IMG/VR virus record: IMGVR_UViG_3300035182_002586
Location: 62,001 to 126,000 of that record
DNA: 64,000 nt
Direction: 5' to 3' (one strand)
Shown here: positions 50,661 through 61,857 of the stretch, in pieces
Numbering within the stretch: position 1 is the first letter of the stretch
Layout: each line of letters starts with the position of its first letter
Translations under genes and position numbers: made by a program
The notes under the pieces: generated by a model
Database searches by the model: none
Seen by the model: only the letters and a program-made list of their open reading frames with translations
What the model was told of the DNA's origin: nothing

Positions 50661-51530
50661 ATGTCGAACGCAACCAGCTACAAGGTGGCCGAGTCACTGT
50701 ACCTCGTCCGCCAGGAAGTCGCGAAGGGGAACCAGGTCGCGAAGCCGGTCGAGATCCCGACCAACCACATCCTGGAGATCGACTGCTCAGGGAGCATGTC
50801 ATGGGATCTCCCCAAGATCCGCGAGCAGGTCAAGAAGAAGCTGGTGAAGCTGCTCAAGGAGGGGGACACCCTCTCCATCGTCTGGTTCAGCGGGCGTGGA
50901 CAGTGCGGGGTTCTCCTGGAAGGTGAGCCGGTCGCGACGCTGGCGGACCTCAACAACGTGAACGCTGCGGTCGATCGCTGGCTCAAGCCGGTCGGCATGA
51001 CGGGCTTCAAGGAGCCGCTGGAGCTGCTCCCGGGCCTGATCGAGCGTCTCGCGAAGAAGTACCCCAAGAACGTCAACTCGCTGATGTTCCTCTCGGACGG
51101 CTGCGACAACCAGTGGTCGCGCCCCGACGTGCTCAAGGCGATGGAGAAGGCGGCCGGCGGGCTCTCAGCCACCACGGTCGTCGAGTACGGCTACTACGCG
51201 GATCGTCCACTGCTCACGGCGATGGCCGAGCGCGCGGGTGGGAGCCTCATCCACGCGGCGGGGTTCGACAAGTTCGAGCCCATCCTCGAAGCCTCGCTCA
51301 AGAAACAGGTCGTCGGCGGCAAGCGCGTCGAGATCGACGTGAAGGGTGACGTCATCGGCGGCTTCGTCTGGATGGAGGACAACGGCGACCTCGTGACCTA
51401 CGGGATCGCGGACGGCAAGGCGCACGTCGCCGAGCAGACGCAGGCGGTGTGGTACCTCTCGCCGACTCCTATGGGGAAGGTGGAGGGGAACCTGAGCCAG
51501 TTGGCGGAACAGGCGTCGAAGGCGGCTTGA
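50661..51530 (+). CDS. vWA-domain protein, N-terminal part of a probable split gene
   Basis: IDCSGSM, GMTGF, FLSDGCDN; AAGGAGG RBS. Confidence 0.85.
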   Translation: MSNATSYKVAESLYLVRQEVAKGNQVAKPVEIPTNHILEIDCSGSMSWDLPKIREQVKKKLVKLLKEGDTLSIVWFSGRGQCGVLLEGEPVATLADLNNVNAAVDRWLKPVGMTGFKEPLELLPGLIERLAKKYPKNVNSLMFLSDGCDNQWSRPDVLKAMEKAAGGLSATTVVEYGYYADRPLLTAMAERAGGSLIHAAGFDKFEPILEASLKKQVVGGKRVEIDVKGDVIGGFVWMEDNGDLVTYGIADGKAHVAEQTQAVWYLSPTPMGKVEGNLSQLAEQASKAA

Positions 51531-52110
51531 GCCGCTCTTCCCGTCTACGCCACGTCCGAATGTGATGGCAGTTCGCGCAGACAAGCTCGCACTTCGCGAC
51601 TTCGGCCTGGAGGACTGCCATCGAGTACGCACGGTTCTTCATGCGAGCGATGTCCATCACCTTCCCGGACTTCACATGATCGAACTGCATCGCAGCGTGG
51701 TGGAACGTACCCCCACAGTCTGTGCAGGGCTTTGATTTCAACTCGCGGATGAACGCTCGTTGCTCATCTCGAACGCGGGAAGCTCGTTTCTTCGAGCGTT
51801 CCATCTGCTCTCCCTTGTGACGGGCGTACCAGGCTCGCCGGTAGGGACGAAGGCAGATCGTACAGGTTCGCTGGTACTTCCCCTTGGCCTTGTTGGCGAC
51901 AGGAAAATCCCCCAAGGGCTTCCATTCCTTGCATCGCCAGCATCGTCGCAAGCCAGGGTTCGCGGTGCTTTGGGTAGAACACGTCGGCCGTTTGTGCCCT
52001 GCCTGCCCGCACAACCCGCACTTCTGGTGGGGCCCAGGCTCTAAGGTCTTCGTTTGATAGTTCACACCGAACACGGTGTATAAGAGATTTAGGAAAGCAA
52101 AGGTTCCCAT
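51469..52110 (-). CDS. HNH endonuclease with N-terminal zinc knuckle
   Basis: CGLCGQAGHKRPTC; CTDCG...FDHV...KCELVCANCH; start uncertain. Confidence 0.8.
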   Translation of the reverse strand: MGTFAFLNLLYTVFGVNYQTKTLEPGPHQKCGLCGQAGHKRPTCSTQSTANPGLRRCWRCKEWKPLGDFPVANKAKGKYQRTCTICLRPYRRAWYARHKGEQMERSKKRASRVRDEQRAFIRELKSKPCTDCGGTFHHAAMQFDHVKSGKVMDIARMKNRAYSMAVLQAEVAKCELVCANCHHIRTWRRREERLKPPSTPVPPTGSGSPPPSP

Positions 52111-53596
52111 GCCCTCGAACGACCCCGTTTCCGCTGCTTACGCTGCTGTCTCGCTTTTCAGCGTTCGTGCGAAGCCCGAAGTGGTTCTCCCTCTGCTTGG
52201 TGCGTTGGGGGATAAGGCTCTCCTGGAGCGTTTCGGAGGGCTTTTCGGCAAGCAGAAGTACTCGGATTTCATGGCGGAGACGAAAGCCGCGTCGTTCGAC
52301 CCGAAGCTCCGTCTCATCAAGGGGTACGATCCGAACGCCCTGCCTCGGGACGACGCGTTCACCGTCCTCGACATGCTCCGCCTGCTCGCGTCCGACGAGG
52401 ACAACAAGGTCCTCCTCGACCACGAAGCGTTCAAGTACAGCCGCATCTCACGCGGGCGCGTCGACGCGTTCACCGTCCTCACGGCGGACGAGCAGGCGGA
52501 GGTCGAGCGCCTCACCGAGGAGCTGACCAAGGCCAAGAAGGATGCCAAGAAGGTCGCCGAGCTGAGCGCGAAGATCGCGGCCATCTCCAACAAGCCTGCG
52601 CCGCTCAAGTTCGAGGCGGACCCGGCGCCCGACGGCTACTCGGTCTCCAACCTCACGTACAACGAGGAGCACCCGAACGTCAGCCTGCTCGTCCGCAAGA
52701 CCGGTACGGTCGACATCTCAGGCCGTCTCCCGGCGGAGATCACCGGCGTCCCGGCCAAGTTCCCGACGTTCATCTTCCGCAACTACGCAGTGGTGAAGGA
52801 TGGGCTCGTCAACGTCGAGGTCCTCCCGACCAAGCTCTCAGCGGCGACGCTCGCGAAGCTCTTCGAGCTGCACAAGGCGGGGAAGTTCTCCGACGAGGTG
52901 GTGAAGTCGGACGGCAACGTCGTCCTCCTCAACTTCAAGTCGCTGCCGGTCATCAACCGCACGATGGTGAAGGCGACGTCGGCGAAGGCCCTCTTCGAGA
53001 ATGAGTGGGCGCTCACGCGCATCCAGGCCGAGCAGAAGGTCTACAAGTCGTTCGCCAAGGAGAAGTTCGGGACCAAGAAGTCCGCGGGCTTCGAGGAGAC
53101 GTACGGTAAGGCGGCGGCCGACTGGCTCAAGGAGCAGGGCTTCACCGACTACTCGGGCTTCTCGCCGAAGAGTGTCCAGGCCGAGTCGACCGACGTGTAC
53201 GTCGCCAAGGAGCTGTCGATCGTGATCAAGGGCTTCTCAGCGATCCCGAGCCTCAACGACTTCAAGAAGCAGGCGGCGAAGGGGAAGTTCACCCCGTCGG
53301 CGCAGCTCATGAAGGACGCGGCCGATGCCGTCGAGAAGTTCCTCGCTTCCGACGACTACAAGAACGGCGGCGACCCGGCGTTCGAGAAGTGGCTCAAGGA
53401 CAAGGACAAGGCGCTCGACAAGACGCGCCGCGCCCTCATCGCCAACAAGGCGCAGCAGATCTTCTGCGTGGTAGTAGGTCAGACGTGGCCGGTGGAGTTC
53501 GCGTCAATCGACGAAACGCAGTTGAAGATCACCACTCCGGAGGGTAACGTCCTGGAGTGCGAAGTGAAGATGCGAGATCGCGAGATCAAGATCTAA
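52109..53596 (+). CDS. Hypothetical protein, probable C-terminal partner of the vWA gene
   Basis: Same strand and codon style as 50661-51530; own GGTGTA motif at ~52075. Confidence 0.7.
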   Translation: MPSNDPVSAAYAAVSLFSVRAKPEVVLPLLGALGDKALLERFGGLFGKQKYSDFMAETKAASFDPKLRLIKGYDPNALPRDDAFTVLDMLRLLASDEDNKVLLDHEAFKYSRISRGRVDAFTVLTADEQAEVERLTEELTKAKKDAKKVAELSAKIAAISNKPAPLKFEADPAPDGYSVSNLTYNEEHPNVSLLVRKTGTVDISGRLPAEITGVPAKFPTFIFRNYAVVKDGLVNVEVLPTKLSAATLAKLFELHKAGKFSDEVVKSDGNVVLLNFKSLPVINRTMVKATSAKALFENEWALTRIQAEQKVYKSFAKEKFGTKKSAGFEETYGKAAADWLKEQGFTDYSGFSPKSVQAESTDVYVAKELSIVIKGFSAIPSLNDFKKQAAKGKFTPSAQLMKDAADAVEKFLASDDYKNGGDPAFEKWLKDKDKALDKTRRALIANKAQQIFCVVVGQTWPVEFASIDETQLKITTPEGNVLECEVKMRDREIKI

Positions 53597-54020
53597 GACC
53601 TTGGGTGGTCTACACCCTGACAGACCCAAGGGAACCTGAGGTCGTCCGTTACGTGGGCTGGGCGAGCAGCCCAGCCCACGTAATCGTCTTCGTACCCACA
53701 TCAATCAAGCGCGAAGTGGTAAAGACACCACACGCTGCGGGAATTGGAAAAGGTCCCTGCTGCAAGACGGCGTGGAGCCCTGCCTCACGGTTATTGAAGC
53801 AGGAGTGGGTAGGGAGTGGGCGACAGCGGAGATGCGGTGGGTAGCATACTATCGCGCCCTGTCCGGCTCCCGCCTCACTAATCTCACCGACGGCGGGGAC
53901 GGGGCTAGAGGTTGCACACGTTCAGCAGAGACGCGTGCCAAGATGAGTGCTGCAAGTCGGGGCCGCACTCACTCCGAAGAGACCAAAGCAAAGCTGCGAG
54001 CTGACCGCTTGGGAGTACCC
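53597..54020 (+). pseudogene. Frameshifted GIY-YIG/NUMOD3 endonuclease
   Basis: VYTLTDPR...RYVGW, frameshift near 53670, then RLRTHI...EMRWV...LTNLTDGGDG...SAETRAKMS. Confidence 0.75.
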
Positions 54021-54325
54021 CGGACGCCTACAAGTCGGCGTGCTCGGTCAACCACGGGTCGGGCCGGACGATGGCGCGTGGCAAGGCGAAGCGGCAGCTC
54101 GAACACAAGCAGGACCGCATCGACGCCGAGATGGCGGAGGTGAAGCGGACGTTCGCGGGTGTTTCCGTCGAAGGGGTGATGATCAACCACCGACACGTGC
54201 CCCTCGACGAATGTGAGCACGTCTACAAGGATCTCGACGAGGTGCTCCGCGTCCTGGAGACCGAGAACATCGCGAGGGTCGCGAACCGCCTGTTCCCCGT
54301 GGCCAACTTGAAGGGGGCTGACTGA
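54020..54325 (+). pseudogene. rtcB: C-terminal fragment of RtcB RNA ligase
   Basis: SACSVNHGSGRTMAR..AK...DEC..VYKDLDEVL...L.PVANLKG; N-terminal portion absent. Confidence 0.8.
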
Positions 54326-60239: not shown

Positions 60240-60392
60240 GACCCTCCTACAACGGGAGGCGGGCGGTGATCCATCCGTCGGTGTACGATCGCAGCATGTC
60301 CGTGCGAGCTTCCACTGCCGTCGCGGTCGCCATCGGCGCCCTGCTCGTGATCGTCCTGTTCCCGCAACTGGTGCGGCTCCGGATCAGTTGAG

Positions 60393-60501
60393 TGGTGGAC
60401 ACGGCCGGGTTCGAACCGGCATCGAGGGCTTTCGGCCCTCCGTTTTACCTGCCCTGGCTACCGGCGGCGCCACCTGCCAGGACTATGAAACGTACGTGCC
60501 C
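60393..60501 (-). ncRNA. tRNA-like RNA with encoded CCA and expanded D-arm
   Basis: Acceptor GGGCACG/CGTGTCC-A-CCA; T-arm GCCGG-TTCGAAC-CCGGC; D-stem CGTTT/AAACG; GAGGG-CCGAAAG-CCCTC arm. Confidence 0.7.
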
Positions 60502-60508
60502 GTAAGAG

Positions 60509-60682
60509 CTACTTCGACGGGTTCAGGTTCGGACAGTAGGGGTTGCTGTGCGTGCGGAGCGGGTGCCCGAAGCAGTGACACGTGGCCTCGACGGAGGTGC
60601 CGCCGCCCTCGAAGTGGGCGACCTTCACCTTGACCCCGTTCTTCACGGTCATCTCGACCCTCACGAGATTGCTCTGTCCCAT
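60509..60682 (-). CDS. Small hypothetical protein
   Basis: GGAGG RBS, TGGATC-class motif; C.C..H...H...C. Confidence 0.55.
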   Translation of the reverse strand: MGQSNLVRVEMTVKNGVKVKVAHFEGGGTSVEATCHCFGHPLRTHSNPYCPNLNPSK

Positions 60683-60740
60683 GCCTCCCTGTACCACGTG
60701 ATGTGAGGGGCGATCCATCCGGCCGGTGTAGAAAGGGGGC

Positions 60741-61229
60741 ATGGGCAATCACGGGCTCGTCGCCGTCTACGCTGGCACGTTCGACCCCCCGACCATCGGG
60801 CACGAGGACCTCATCAAGCGGGCGCTCGGCTTCTGCGAGAAGCTGATCATCGGCATCGGGGTCAACTCGACCAAGACGCCGATCTTCACCGTCGAAGAGC
60901 GCGTCGAGATGCTCCAGAAGCTCGCGGACAACCCCCGGGTCGAGGTCGTGGCCTTCCAGGGGCTCCTCGTCGACTTCGTGCGCAAGAGCGGCGGGAGCAT
61001 GATCATCCGCGGCTTGCGTGCCGTGATGGACTTCGAGTACGAGATGGGCATCGCGCACGCGAACGCCGACCAGGCGCCGACGGTCGAGACCGTCTTCCTC
61101 GCGACCAAGCCGCAGTACTCGTTCATCTCCTCGTCTGTCGTCCGTGAGGTCGCCAAGTACGGCGGCTCCGTGCGACACTACGTCTCCCCGCTCGTCGAAG
61201 AGGCCCTCAGGGCCAAGTTCAGGAAGTAG
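60741..61229 (+). CDS. coaD: Phosphopantetheine adenylyltransferase
   Basis: YAGTFDPPTIGH, IIRGLR...DFEYE, ISSSVVRE. Confidence 0.95.
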   Translation: MGNHGLVAVYAGTFDPPTIGHEDLIKRALGFCEKLIIGIGVNSTKTPIFTVEERVEMLQKLADNPRVEVVAFQGLLVDFVRKSGGSMIIRGLRAVMDFEYEMGIAHANADQAPTVETVFLATKPQYSFISSSVVREVAKYGGSVRHYVSPLVEEALRAKFRK

Positions 61230-61253: not shown

Positions 61254-61327
61254 GCTCCCGTGGCCGAGTGGTTCAGGCGGGCGACTTTAAATCGCCGTCA
61301 ACGTGGGTTCGAGTCCCACCGGGGGCG
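61254..61327 (+). tRNA. Ochre suppressor tRNA, anticodon TTA at 61287-61289
   Basis: Full cloverleaf: GCTCCCG/CGGGGGC, GCC-GAGTGGTTCA-GGC, GGCGA-CTTTAAA-TCGCC, GTGGG-TTCGAGT-CCCAC; discriminator G; no encoded CCA. Confidence 0.85.
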
Positions 61328-61857
61328 CTCCTCTTCAAGTGGTTGCGGACAGATGATTCGGCTACCCCAAGCTGTCTGACTACTTCACTCTTTGAGGTCT
61401 TTGCAATCAAGTCCAGAAGCTCCTCCATCGGAGGCCATGCGGCACGCTTAGCTCTAGGCTTTCGGTGCCCACACGAACGACACTGCACACTGGACTTGGC
61501 GATCGTAGTCCCGCACCGACAGGTCTTGTGTGTGGCCTTCGCGATGCTCCGCCCACAGAACGTTGCGGTCTGTGAGTCGCAGTTAGGACACAGAAACCTC
61601 AAGTTTTCTAGTCTGTGATCACGATTCACACCGTTGATATGGTCCAGCCGAAGCACGAGAGGTTTTCCTCCCCACTCGGGCCCAAGCTGACAGCCAACAC
61701 AGTGGGATGTGTCCAGGGCCAGGCGCGCGATAGCGTTGCGCACGTAGGCTGCCCCTCCACCAGAAGCAGAGGGTCGACCTAGAGCACGAAGAATTGCAGT
61801 GACACTAGCGTGCTCTCGCACAAGCACCACCAGGGTGTCGTCAGAGATGGGTTACAT
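61273..61857 (-). CDS. HNH endonuclease overlapping the tRNA antisense; upstream ATG at 61857 followed by in-frame TAA (alternative GTG start 61830)
   Basis: LRLDHINGVNRDHRLENLRFLCPNCDSQT; C-terminal HTH. Confidence 0.75.

What the first reader, a model, noticed from the sequence alone, without database searches (positions are those of the whole stretch)
60393..60501. tRNA-like RNA with a ~40-nt hairpin inserted in the D-loop
Seen in sequence (minus strand): GGGCACG-TA-CGTTT-[catagtcctggcaggtggcgccgccggtagccagggcaggta]-AAACG-GAGGG-CCGAAAG-CCCTC-GAT-GCCGG-TTCGAAC-CCGGC-CGTGTCC-A-CCA. All stems pair, and the insert forms its own stem (gtcctggc/gccagggc). The 'anticodon' loop lacks U33 and could instead be a GAAA tetraloop, or a GAA (Phe) anticodon. 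Inference: the intact pairing and encoded CCA argue against random decay. It may be a tRNA mimic or decoy (for example against anticodon nucleases), a Y-RNA-like molecule, or a tRNA with a D-loop intron. It lies near tRNA-binding, SpoU and RtcB genes. Standard tRNA finders may miss it.
Basis: partly seen in the sequence, partly recalled or inferred. Interest (0 to 1): 0.75.

Follow-up and report, generated by a model that had tools for sequence, protein, structure and literature searches.

The report
Non-decoding alanine-type tRNA mimic
A giant bacteriophage carries a conserved tRNA-shaped RNA that keeps the marks for being loaded with alanine but has no usable anticodon and has an extra hairpin in its D-loop, so it probably uses the cell's tRNA machinery for something other than reading codons.

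Summary
Window 60393-60501 (minus strand) folds into a cloverleaf with a 33-nt hairpin in the D-loop. ARAGORN and Rfam at gathering score miss it. The window belongs to a 529-kb phage record with 54 tRNA genes and a tmRNA. Covariance models found four homologues, in three other large phage records and one 285-kb metagenome contig. Four of the five copies sit inside tRNA arrays. Members score 86-109 bits; ordinary tRNAs score 43 bits or less. Twenty of 31 base pairs show compensatory changes and 95% of cells pair.

These features are invariant in all five:
- G1-C72, G2-C71, G3.U70 and A73, the alanine identity marks. In seven genomes of this clade G3.U70 occurs in 19 of 19 tRNA-Ala and 3 of 302 other tRNAs.
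- G18G19 and the T-loop.
- A 5-nt CGAAA loop in place of the 7-nt anticodon loop.
- A GCGC tetraloop beside a U.G pair at the tip of the inserted hairpin.

It is therefore not tRNA-Phe, not a Y RNA (the genome has no Ro gene) and not a tRNA that splicing would rescue. My best reading is a tRNA-Ala-derived acceptor RNA that cannot decode and is recognised by AlaRS, with the hairpin serving as a docking site. What it does after that is unknown. No transcript data were available.

The parts
60393..60501 (-). Whole tRNA-like RNA gene (109 nt, called TL here)
   Evidence: Fold. Covariance-model scores of 141, 120 and 109 bits. Homologues.
60495..60501 (-). Acceptor stem, 5' strand (GGGCACG), with G1, G2 and G3
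   Evidence: Pairs 1:72, 2:71 and 3:70 are invariant as G-C, G-C and G.U in all five members. Pairs 4-7 covary.
60397..60403 (-). Acceptor stem, 3' strand (CGUGUCC), with U70
60393..60396 (-). Discriminator A73 (60396) and encoded CCA (60393-60395)
   Evidence: A73 and the C after it are invariant in all five members. The full CCA is present only in this copy.
60488..60492 (-). D stem, 5' strand
   Evidence: All five D-stem pairs show changes on both sides and every cell pairs.
60441..60445 (-). D stem, 3' strand
60451..60483 (-). Hairpin inserted in the D-loop (outer 8-bp stem, internal loop, apical hairpin)
   Evidence: Seven of the eight outer pairs have compensatory changes. The insert is present in all five members, with total RNA lengths of 102-122 nt.
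60463..60474 (-). Tip of the inserted hairpin: a 4-bp stem with an invariant U.G pair and an invariant GCGC tetraloop
   Evidence: Every cell pairs, three of four pairs are compensatory, and U.G and GCGC are invariant.
60446..60450 (-). 3' part of the D-loop (AGGUA), holding the equivalents of G18, G19 and A21
   Evidence: The GG and the final A are present in all five members.
60425..60439 (-). Arm in the anticodon position: 5-bp stem AGGGC/GCCCU and the 5-nt loop CGAAA (60430-60434)
   Evidence: The loop is invariant. The first and last stem pairs covary. The sixth pair occurs only in this copy.
60404..60420 (-). T arm (5-bp stem, loop UUCGAAC)
   Evidence: The UUCGA of the T-loop is invariant and two stem pairs are compensatory.
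60509..60682 (-). 57-codon ORF ending 7 nt upstream of the RNA on the same strand. It is specific to this phage.
   Evidence: GC3 of 0.88. GGGAGG lies 5 nt before the ATG. No homologue among 5.8 billion proteins and none in PHROGs. It is not found beside the other four copies.
60248..60298 (+). Left copy of a roughly 50-nt direct repeat that flanks the ORF-plus-RNA cassette
   Evidence: Repeat families D2 and D3, spaced 444-445 nt apart, 70-77% identical.
60692..60743 (+). Right copy of the flanking direct repeat. It ends at the ATG of the cytidylyltransferase-like gene.

Best explanation
This is a gene for a tRNA(Ala)-derived acceptor RNA that cannot decode, and it belongs to a small family found in large phages.

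Shown here:
- It keeps the tRNA core: a 7-bp acceptor stem, U8/A9, a D stem, G18G19/A21 and a canonical T arm.
- It usually lies inside phage tRNA arrays on the same strand as the tRNAs.
- It keeps G1-C72, G2-C71, G3.U70 and A73 invariant while the rest of the acceptor stem covaries.
- The anticodon loop is replaced by a closed 5-nt CGAAA loop.
- The D-loop carries a hairpin whose tip (a GCGC tetraloop next to a U.G pair) is invariant.

Inferred from established tRNA biology:
- It is transcribed and matured like a tRNA: RNase P at the 5' end, 3' trimming, and CCA addition where CCA is not encoded.
- It folds into an L shape with the extra hairpin projecting from the elbow.
- The host alanyl-tRNA synthetase recognises it and probably charges it. 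That enzyme reads the acceptor stem and needs no anticodon.
- It cannot read codons.

Most likely mechanism (inference): it engages AlaRS, or carries alanine, outside normal decoding, and the conserved hairpin tip docks an unidentified protein or RNA partner. This uses the same identity trick as tmRNA.

In this phage the gene has moved out of the tRNA array as a roughly 390-nt cassette together with a 57-codon ORF.
For: Structure and conservation:
- Each of the five RNAs folds into the same architecture on its own.
- Covariation is strong: 95.4% of cells pair, 20 of 31 pairs are compensatory, and 0 of 500 shuffles match this. RNAalifold gives the same consensus.
- Scores fall into two separate groups. 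Family members score 86-109 bits and every ordinary tRNA in 44 phage records scores 43 bits or less.

Alanine marks:
- G1-C72, G2-C71, G3.U70 and A73 are invariant in all five, while pairs 4:69 to 7:66 change on both sides.
- Among 321 ARAGORN tRNAs from seven genomes of the clade, G3.U70 occurs in 19 of 19 tRNA-Ala, all with A73, and in 3 of 302 others.
- The published bacterial alanine identity set is A73, G2-C71, G3.U70, G4-C69 and G20. G3.U70 works in minihelices and can convert other tRNAs to alanine acceptance (PMC9976931).

No decoding:
- The CGAAA loop is invariant and its closing pair covaries (C-G in four, A-U in one), so the loop has 5 nt, not 7.

Docking module:
- The hairpin tip pairs in every cell, three of four pairs are compensatory, and U.G and GCGC are invariant.

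tRNA-like genomic setting:
- Four of five copies lie in tRNA arrays on the tRNA strand. The G013 copy starts 4 nt after tRNA-Ala(CGC).

Phage-specific:
- The motif is absent from 185,579 prokaryote genomes and from GenBank phages.
Against: - No expression, processing or aminoacylation data exist. No RNA run could be listed.
- Only five sequences are known, and the alignment was fitted to the model.
- The minor alanine determinant G4-C69 is absent: the pair is C-G in four copies and U-A in one. Position 20 is U in four of five. Charging may therefore be inefficient.
- A hairpin at the elbow could interfere with the C-terminal domain of AlaRS, with EF-Tu or with RNase P. This was not tested.
- No partner was found. 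None of the four TL-bearing phage records searched has FemAB or SmpB; G000, the only record searched for them, has no AlaRS or Ro gene. There is no conserved neighbouring gene. Phylogenetic profiling gave no specific candidate.
- The distribution is patchy. Four of the 44 phage records scanned carry it (a fifth copy lies on a metagenome contig outside that set), and it is absent from the closest complete relative, G002. It is therefore dispensable.
Confidence: 0.55

Rival explanations
1. It is a decoy or sponge. The RNA is not charged. It soaks up a host factor that recognises the tRNA acceptor/T-arm/elbow or tRNA-Ala specifically, for example an anti-phage toxin that modifies or cleaves tRNA acceptor ends, and so protects the real tRNAs.
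For: - The tRNA core and acceptor stem are conserved while the decoding part is lost.
- The RNA is accessory and patchily distributed, as counter-defence genes often are.
- In this phage it lies in a variable block that the relative G001 lacks.
Against: - There is no anticodon loop, so it cannot be a decoy for anticodon nucleases.
- Strict conservation of exactly the AlaRS marks, with free covariation elsewhere in the acceptor stem, points to AlaRS or another reader of G3.U70 as the partner.
- A pure decoy does not need the invariant hairpin tip.
- No tRNA-Ala-specific defence is known to me.
Confidence: 0.2
2. It acts on the ribosome like a tmRNA without a tag. The alanine-charged RNA enters stalled ribosomes with an empty A site, accepts the nascent chain, and offers no tag reading frame. 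The capped arm or the D-loop hairpin would stand in for codon reading or for SmpB contacts.
For: - It has the same identity logic as the tRNA-like domain of tmRNA: G3.U70, A73 and no anticodon.
- These phages also invest in trans-translation and carry their own tmRNA.
- My recollection, not checked here, is that some organelle tmRNAs are reduced to the tRNA-like domain alone.
Against: - ARAGORN does not call it as a tmRNA, and its only tmRNA-family match in Rfam is 14.5 bits to permuted tmRNA, against a cut-off of 47.
- It is a four-way junction with a full D stem, unlike the tmRNA tRNA-like domain.
- The phages have no SmpB.
- Without a stop codon the peptidyl-RNA would need another release route.
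- A hairpin at the elbow may clash with the ribosome.
Confidence: 0.1
3. It is an intron-containing tRNA. The D-loop hairpin is spliced out, for example by cleavage followed by RtcB-type ligation, to give a working tRNA of about 70 nt.
For: - Removing the hairpin would leave a normal-sized D-loop with G18G19.
- An RtcB fragment lies 6 kb away.
Against: - After removal the anticodon loop is still the 5-nt CGAAA without U33.
- The hairpin tip is conserved in sequence, like a functional module.
- The RtcB match covers only 89 C-terminal positions, and no RtcB-related gene is among the protein matches shared by the five TL loci.
- By inspection of the five sequences there is no bulge-helix-bulge motif at the junctions.
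Confidence: 0.03
4. It is a Y-RNA-like molecule that tethers a Ro-type protein to an effector through a tRNA-like module.
For: My recollection, not checked here, is that bacterial YrlA RNAs contain a tRNA-like domain and are often encoded near rtcB.
Against: - The 529-kb genome has no TROVE/Ro gene.
- No YrlA match appeared in the Rfam searches, not even in the E-value search of the locus.
- The RNA ends form an acceptor stem with a free NCCA, not a Ro-binding stem.
- RtcB is present only as a fragment.
Confidence: 0.02
5. It is not a functional RNA. It could be a decaying tRNA pseudogene, a leftover phage attachment site, or just a terminator hairpin for the converging plus-strand genes.
For: - On the plus strand the complement of the short arm (60424-60440) followed by CGTTTT scores as a terminator-like site just after a small plus-strand ORF.
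- In this phage the RNA sits in an inserted cassette flanked by direct repeats.
Against: - Five copies in phages whose compared proteins are mostly only about 30-60% identical keep all helices through compensatory changes.
- The A-run that creates the plus-strand T-run exists only in this copy.
- The other four copies run in the same direction as the tRNAs around them.
- The 29-nt motif spanning the short arm and T arm has no match in 185,579 prokaryote genomes, as a host attachment site would require.
Confidence: 0.03

Closest known systems
Bacterial or phage tRNA-Ala
   Same: It has a 7-bp acceptor stem with G1-C72, G2-C71, G3.U70 and A73. It also has U8/A9, a D stem, G18G19, A21 and a canonical T arm. 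It lies within tRNA arrays, and in G013 it directly follows three tRNA-Ala genes.
   Different: The anticodon loop is a 5-nt CGAAA without U33 or an Ala anticodon. A 26-49-nt hairpin is inserted in the D-loop. Pair 4:69 is not G-C. It scores below the Rfam tRNA gathering score and ARAGORN does not call it.
tRNA-like domain of tmRNA
   Same: It is an RNA with alanine identity that does not need an anticodon, so recognition by AlaRS would rest on G3.U70 and A73. It is encoded by phages that also carry a tmRNA.
   Different: It has no mRNA-like domain and no pseudoknots. It keeps a real D stem and a short arm in the anticodon position, forming a four-way junction. Its only tmRNA-family match in Rfam is 14.5 bits against a cut-off of 47, and ARAGORN does not call it as a tmRNA. 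The phages have no SmpB.
YrlA-type bacterial Y RNAs (tRNA-mimicking module)
   Same: It is a non-coding RNA that copies the tRNA core and cannot decode.
   Different: From memory, YrlA has no free CCA end and carries a Ro-binding stem formed by its two ends. Here the ends form the acceptor stem, and the genome has no Ro gene.
Aminoacylatable tRNA-like structures of plant RNA viruses, and non-proteinogenic tRNAs used outside translation (e.g. staphylococcal tRNA-Gly for cell-wall synthesis)
   Same: The concept is the same: a virus or cell keeps synthetase identity elements on an RNA that does not serve ordinary decoding.
   Different: This is a free-standing small RNA gene in a DNA phage. Its identity is alanine. 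It has an inserted D-loop hairpin. The staphylococcal tRNAs keep a normal anticodon loop. This comparison rests on my own knowledge and was not tested here.
Archaeal tRNAs with introns at non-canonical positions, including the D-loop
   Same: Extra sequence interrupts the D-loop of a cloverleaf.
   Different: No bulge-helix-bulge motif was seen on inspection. The tip of the insert is conserved in sequence. Removing the insert would not give a decoding tRNA. The setting is a bacterial phage.

Membership tests
Canonical tRNA (Rfam RF00005 / ARAGORN) | Scores at or above the family gathering score, or is called by a tRNA finder | tested here: not met
   It scores 24 bits against a cut-off of 29, and only with the insert skipped. 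Neither ARAGORN nor Rfam at gathering score reports it.
Canonical tRNA (Rfam RF00005 / ARAGORN) | A 7-nt anticodon loop with U33 and an anticodon | tested here: not met
   The loop is a 5-nt CGAAA, invariant in all five copies. The flanking positions covary as a base pair.
Canonical tRNA (Rfam RF00005 / ARAGORN) | A 7-bp acceptor stem, a T arm with a UUCRA loop, and G18G19 in the D-loop | tested here: met
Alanine-identity RNA (AlaRS substrate) | G3.U70 wobble pair | tested here: met
   G.U is present in all five copies. Within the clade it is specific to tRNA-Ala: 19 of 19 against 3 of 302.
Alanine-identity RNA (AlaRS substrate) | A73 and G2-C71, with G1-C72 rather than G1.U72 | tested here: met
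   These are invariant in all five copies. The identity set comes from PMC9976931.
Alanine-identity RNA (AlaRS substrate) | The minor determinants G4-C69 and G20 | tested here: not met
   Pair 4:69 is C-G in four copies and U-A in one. Position 20 is U in four of five copies.
Alanine-identity RNA (AlaRS substrate) | Actual alanylation by AlaRS | not testable with these tools
   The complex-prediction job with E. coli AlaRS residues 1-461 was not folded and gives no evidence either way.
tmRNA | Match to a tmRNA model, and a tag reading frame | tested here: not met
   The only tmRNA-family match is 14.5 bits to permuted tmRNA against a cut-off of 47. ARAGORN finds the phage's real tmRNA elsewhere in the genome. 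I saw no tag-type reading frame in the 109 nt by reading the sequence; this was not tested with a tool.
tmRNA | SmpB partner | tested here: not met
   None of the four TL-bearing phage records has an SmpB gene. A host SmpB cannot be excluded.
Y RNA / YrlA | A Ro (TROVE) protein encoded with it, and a Ro-binding stem formed by the 5' and 3' ends | tested here: not met
   There is no TROVE match in the 529-kb genome. The RNA ends form the acceptor stem with a free ACCA. No YrlA match appeared in the Rfam searches.
Intron-containing tRNA | Removing the insert restores a decoding tRNA, and there is a bulge-helix-bulge or self-splicing motif | tested here: not met
   The loop stays CGAAA after removal of the insert. 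The junctions are plain 3-7-nt D-loop segments by inspection. Rfam finds no intron family.

The most novel reading that the evidence does not exclude
This is a previously undescribed class of phage RNA: a tRNA mimic that is charged with alanine, cannot decode, and uses a conserved hairpin on its elbow (GCGC loop plus a U.G pair) to recruit a partner. The phage would then route alanine, or AlaRS itself, into a process outside ordinary translation. Candidate processes are tagless ribosome rescue, aminoacyl transfer to a non-ribosomal target, or control of the host alanine-charging system.
Probability: 0.3. Interest if true: 0.85.

Novelty: new variant of a known kind. Interest (0 to 1): 0.7.

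Why it matters
Large phages are known to carry many tRNAs and a tmRNA, but these are read as simple supplements to decoding. This family shows selection for an RNA that keeps the synthetase identity marks and the tRNA core while discarding the anticodon and gaining a conserved extra module. That is the same design logic as tmRNA, in a different and much smaller form.

If it is charged, it would be a second natural example of alanine identity being used on a non-decoding RNA. It would also give a simple system for asking what a phage gains from engaging AlaRS or EF-Tu off the normal pathway.

In practice it also shows that tRNA finders and Rfam miss a class of expanded tRNA-like genes in phage tRNA arrays. 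A second, unrelated family of about 130-140 nt was seen in the same genome.

Tried and rejected
- Close-relative searches. BLAST of the locus and of the RNA against GenBank phages found nothing.
- The upstream ORF. It has no relatives in IMG/VR or among 5.8 billion proteins.
- First DNA pattern. It was too strict and found nothing.
- MAFFT alignment of three members. It misaligned the 5' half, so I used model-based alignments instead.
- Derivation from tRNA-Phe. The single-sequence model's best ordinary hit in this genome was tRNA-Phe(GAA) at 39.5 bits. The likeness is only generic, and the best ordinary hits of the later model were mixed: Phe, Ala, Gly and Met.
- Partner families. There is no Ro, AlaRS, FemAB or SmpB. 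A CCA-adding enzyme is found only in G013.
- Phylogenetic profiling. I compared G000, G024 and G013 against the TL-free genomes G002, G003 and G011. This gave five candidates: a carbamoyltransferase, an AAA ATPase and three unknown proteins. The 442-aa candidate also occurs in six TL-free records at E of 1e-11 or better, so I dropped this line.
- Complex prediction with AlaRS. The job was not folded and gives no evidence.
- Read mapping of four metagenome runs. Relatives in X4 and X5 cover the RNA, and no difference inside it appears among the listed sites. However, 139 differences were not shown, so this gave no usable covariation.
- RNA runs. None was listed.
- Complementarity between the hairpin tip and the upstream ORF (13 nt, 92%). 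I judged it background for this GC-rich stretch.
- Weak 71-106-nt matches (L105, L108, L106, L098, L096/L097). They lack a paired acceptor stem or the hairpin and were not counted as members.

Full report
**Observation**

The minus strand of window 60393-60501 reads as the first-stage reader wrote it. RNAfold gives a four-way junction at -55.6 kcal/mol, with z = -3.8 and 0 of 200 shuffles as stable. The parts of the fold are:
- a 7-bp acceptor stem;
- two linker bases, UA;
- a 5-bp stem in the D position that carries a 33-nt hairpin;
- a GC-rich short arm;
- a 5-bp T stem with loop UUCGAAC;
- then A-CCA.

ARAGORN reports one gene in the window, a suppressor tRNA at 61254-61328. Rfam at gathering score reports only that same gene. 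In a permissive scan the Rfam tRNA model reaches 24 bits against a cut-off of 29, and only by jumping over the insert. The feature is therefore real, and standard finders do miss it.

**Genome context**

The window is bases 62001-126000 of a 528,957-bp IMG/VR record cut from a 620-kb contig. The record has 64% G+C, 54 tRNA genes, mostly in arrays at 138-177 kb, and a tmRNA.

A conserved 506-aa protein (window 52076-53596, phrog_2426) retrieved 37 related viral records of up to 512 kb. Several have direct terminal repeats and are rated complete. Its nearest cultured relatives, at about 33% identity, are phages of about 155-160 kb that infect Klebsiella, Salmonella, Dickeya and Rhizobium. This is a clade of very large phages, probably of Proteobacteria.

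Genes around the RNA are as follows:
- a SpoU methylase, a histidine phosphatase, an HSP20 and a tRNA-binding-domain protein upstream;
- a cytidylyltransferase-like gene and the suppressor tRNA downstream;
- for RtcB, only an 89-position C-terminal fragment at 54020-54316.

None of these neighbours is kept next to the RNA in other phages. The relative G001 lacks the whole block.

**Homologues**

I call the RNA TL. A covariance model built from the single sequence, run over the whole records of the relatives, gave two full-length hits: G024 at 67 bits and G013 at 58 bits. A motif taken from the three sequences was then scanned in three collections:
- IMG/VR returned only the two known copies.
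- JGI and ENA metagenomes returned one more, on the 285-kb contig Ga0164309_10000001.
- 185,579 prokaryote genomes returned nothing.

A looser motif added a copy in IMGVR_UViG_3300049893_000773. That record shares core proteins with G000 at about 37% identity.

With the final five-sequence model the members score 86-109 bits. Every ordinary tRNA in 44 phage records scores 43 bits or less. The family is small and patchy. It is absent from the nine other relatives of this clade that are at least 90% complete, including the closest one, G002.

**Structure and covariation**

All five RNAs (102-122 nt) fold on their own into the same architecture.

On the model-based alignment 95.4% of cells form standard pairs. 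Twenty of 31 pairs have changes on both sides. None of 500 column shuffles reaches any of the five measures. Structures slid by 1-3 columns pair in only 31-48% of cells. RNAalifold predicts the same helices by itself, with 22 compensatory pairs, and also finds the small apical helix. The caveats are that there are only five sequences and that the alignment was fitted to the model.

In the G024 copy the D arm has the textbook GCUC-AG... start and ...GGUA-GAGC end. The hairpin sits between position 17 and G18.

**What is invariant**

1. G1-C72, G2-C71, G3.U70, A73 and the C that follows are the same in all five copies. Pairs 4:69, 5:68, 6:67 and 7:66 all change on both sides.
2. U8/A9, the GG and the final A of the D-loop, and the UUCGA of the T-loop are invariant. 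The tertiary core of a tRNA is therefore kept.
3. The arm in the anticodon position is a 5-bp stem closed by the loop CGAAA.
   - The loop is invariant, and the closing pair covaries (C-G in four copies, A-U in one).
   - The loop therefore has five bases, not seven, and has no U33.
   - The sixth pair seen in this window is private to this copy.
4. The tip of the inserted hairpin is a 4-bp stem with an invariant U.G pair next to the closing pair, capped by an invariant GCGC tetraloop. Three of its four pairs are compensatory and every cell pairs. The outer stem varies freely in sequence and length.

**Identity**

The published bacterial alanine identity set is A73, G2-C71, G3.U70, G4-C69 and G20. 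G3.U70 is the major determinant. It works in minihelices and can convert other tRNAs to alanine acceptance (PMC9976931).

In seven genomes of this clade G3.U70 is found in 19 of 19 tRNA-Ala, all with A73, and in 3 of 302 other tRNAs. Its presence with A73 in all five TL copies, next to a freely covarying lower stem, is therefore best explained by selection for recognition by AlaRS or by another reader of G3.U70. In G013 the gene starts 4 nt after tRNA-Ala(CGC) and follows three tRNA-Ala genes, which fits origin by duplication of a tRNA-Ala gene.

Against efficient charging, pair 4:69 is never G-C and position 20 is U in four of five copies.

The similarity to the phage tRNA-Phe is only generic.

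**Mechanism**

Shown:
- It is a conserved, structured gene with a tRNA core, usually located in tRNA arrays.
- It carries alanine marks.
- It has no anticodon loop.
- It has a conserved extra hairpin tip.

Inferred:
- It is transcribed and matured with the tRNAs. CCA is encoded only in this copy, as it is for 24 of 54 tRNA genes in this phage. G013 encodes a CCA-adding enzyme.
- It folds into an L shape with the hairpin projecting from the elbow.
- Host AlaRS binds it and probably charges it.
- It cannot decode.

I therefore read it as an alanine-type acceptor RNA used outside ordinary decoding, with the hairpin tip as a docking site for an unidentified partner. The step after AlaRS is open. 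It could donate alanine, act on stalled ribosomes like a tagless tmRNA, titrate AlaRS or other G3.U70 readers, or serve as a decoy for factors that target the acceptor end.

The closing pair plus the tetraloop form a 6-nt palindrome (GGCGCC or UGCGCA). Dimer formation through a loop-loop contact is an untested alternative for the hairpin tip.

**Rivals**

- Y RNA. The genome has no TROVE/Ro gene, no YrlA match appeared in the Rfam searches, and the RNA ends lie in the acceptor stem.
- Intron. Removing the hairpin does not create an anticodon loop, the tip is conserved, and I see no bulge-helix-bulge motif.
- tmRNA. No model matches, there is no tag frame, the RNA is a four-way junction, and the phages have no SmpB.
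- Pseudogene, attachment site or terminator.
  - The covariation argues against all three.
  - The complement of the short arm does score as a plus-strand terminator-like site in this copy only. That may be a secondary local use.

**Local history in this phage**

Here the RNA lies 16 kb from the main tRNA array, on the strand opposite to its neighbours. It starts 7 nt after a 57-codon ORF that has a good ribosome-binding site and no detectable relatives.

A direct repeat of about 50 nt (60248-60298 and 60692-60743, 70-77% identical) brackets the ORF-plus-RNA unit. Each copy ends in an ATG. One contig from a related population joins 60392 to 60725 on opposite strands, as if the unit were inverted there (weak, a single contig). 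This looks like a small cassette that moved, and it fits the patchy distribution.

**Partner search and literature**

Partner search:
- No FemAB, SmpB, AlaRS or Ro was found.
- Comparing three TL-bearing genomes with three TL-free genomes gave five candidates. The first one I checked also occurs in TL-free records.
- The complex prediction with AlaRS was not run by the tool.
- No RNA sequencing run could be listed.

Full-text searches found no description of a tRNA-like RNA with a D-loop hairpin or of this family. A review of non-canonical tRNAs lists nothing similar.

**Verdict**

The RNA is a member of a new, small family of tRNA(Ala)-derived RNAs in large phages that cannot decode and carry a conserved D-loop hairpin. 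I rate it a new variant of a known kind (tRNA mimics and tRNA-like RNAs). Its function is unproven, and the biochemical hypothesis is clear and cheap to test.

Noticed in passing
window 61254-61328 (+): There is a tRNA with anticodon UUA, which would read the UAA stop codon (an ochre suppressor). It scores 55 bits on the Rfam tRNA model and lies 750 nt from the tRNA-like RNA on the opposite strand. The related phage G035 carries a long-arm suppressor with anticodon CUA (L066:1501-1592).
   Followed up: partly
G000 156563-157817 (outside the window; L002:18563-19817): This is a second, unrelated family of expanded tRNA-like genes of about 128-142 nt, with at least four copies with a paired acceptor stem (six copies of the shared motif). 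Each has a 7-bp acceptor stem, a D-type hairpin, an arm with a 7-nt loop and a T arm. The variable region runs to about 65 nt and holds a conserved motif (CCTCGCAYCCGCAAGGRNGCA). ARAGORN and Rfam miss these genes, and they lack G3.U70. The motif occurs once in the related phage G001 (L010:6689-6709).
   Followed up: partly
L092:1069-1199 (-) = G027 369768-369898: This 131-nt RNA in a related phage has the acceptor stem typical of tmRNA and tRNA-Ala (GGGGCUG...CAGCUCC-A-CCA, with G3.U70), a T arm and several internal hairpins. It is far too short to be a tmRNA. It may be another alanine-type tRNA-like RNA.
   Followed up: no
window 60248-60298 and 60692-60743: A direct repeat of about 50 nt (70-77% identical, spaced 444-445 nt apart) flanks the small ORF plus the tRNA-like RNA. 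Each copy ends in an ATG, one for a 31-codon hydrophobic ORF and one for the cytidylyltransferase-like gene. This suggests the cassette was inserted.
   Followed up: partly
window 60392 | 60725: One contig from groundwater run X4 joins these two positions on opposite strands. That would invert exactly the ORF-plus-RNA unit in a related population. It rests on a single contig with a 31-nt side, so it is weak.
   Followed up: no
window 60424-60440 (+): The complement of the short CGAAA-capped arm, followed by CGTTTT, scores as an intrinsic-terminator-like site on the plus strand. It lies 33 nt after the stop codon of a small plus-strand ORF. Only this copy of the RNA has the A-run that creates the T-run.
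   Followed up: partly
window 54020-54316 (+): The RtcB match covers only the last 89 of 426 profile positions, in an open frame of 138 aa. No N-terminal part was found anywhere in the 529-kb genome, so this is an RtcB remnant or a very divergent or split gene.
   Followed up: no
window 50661-51530 and 52076-53596 (+): Two neighbouring ORFs match the first third (positions 16-255) and the rest (261-736) of a single PHROG family, phrog_2426 (function unknown). Both parts are conserved across the phage clade. Some GenBank relatives annotate the homologue as a VWFA-domain or minor tail protein.
   Followed up: no
L096:497-577 (-) and L097:933-1013 (+): These are identical 81-nt tRNA-like sequences from two ENA assemblies, located in a tRNA array. 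They have the same AGGGC-CGAAA-GCCCU arm and a G.U at acceptor position 3. They lack the D-loop hairpin, and the D region and pair 1:72 are poor. They may be a distant or decayed relative.
   Followed up: partly
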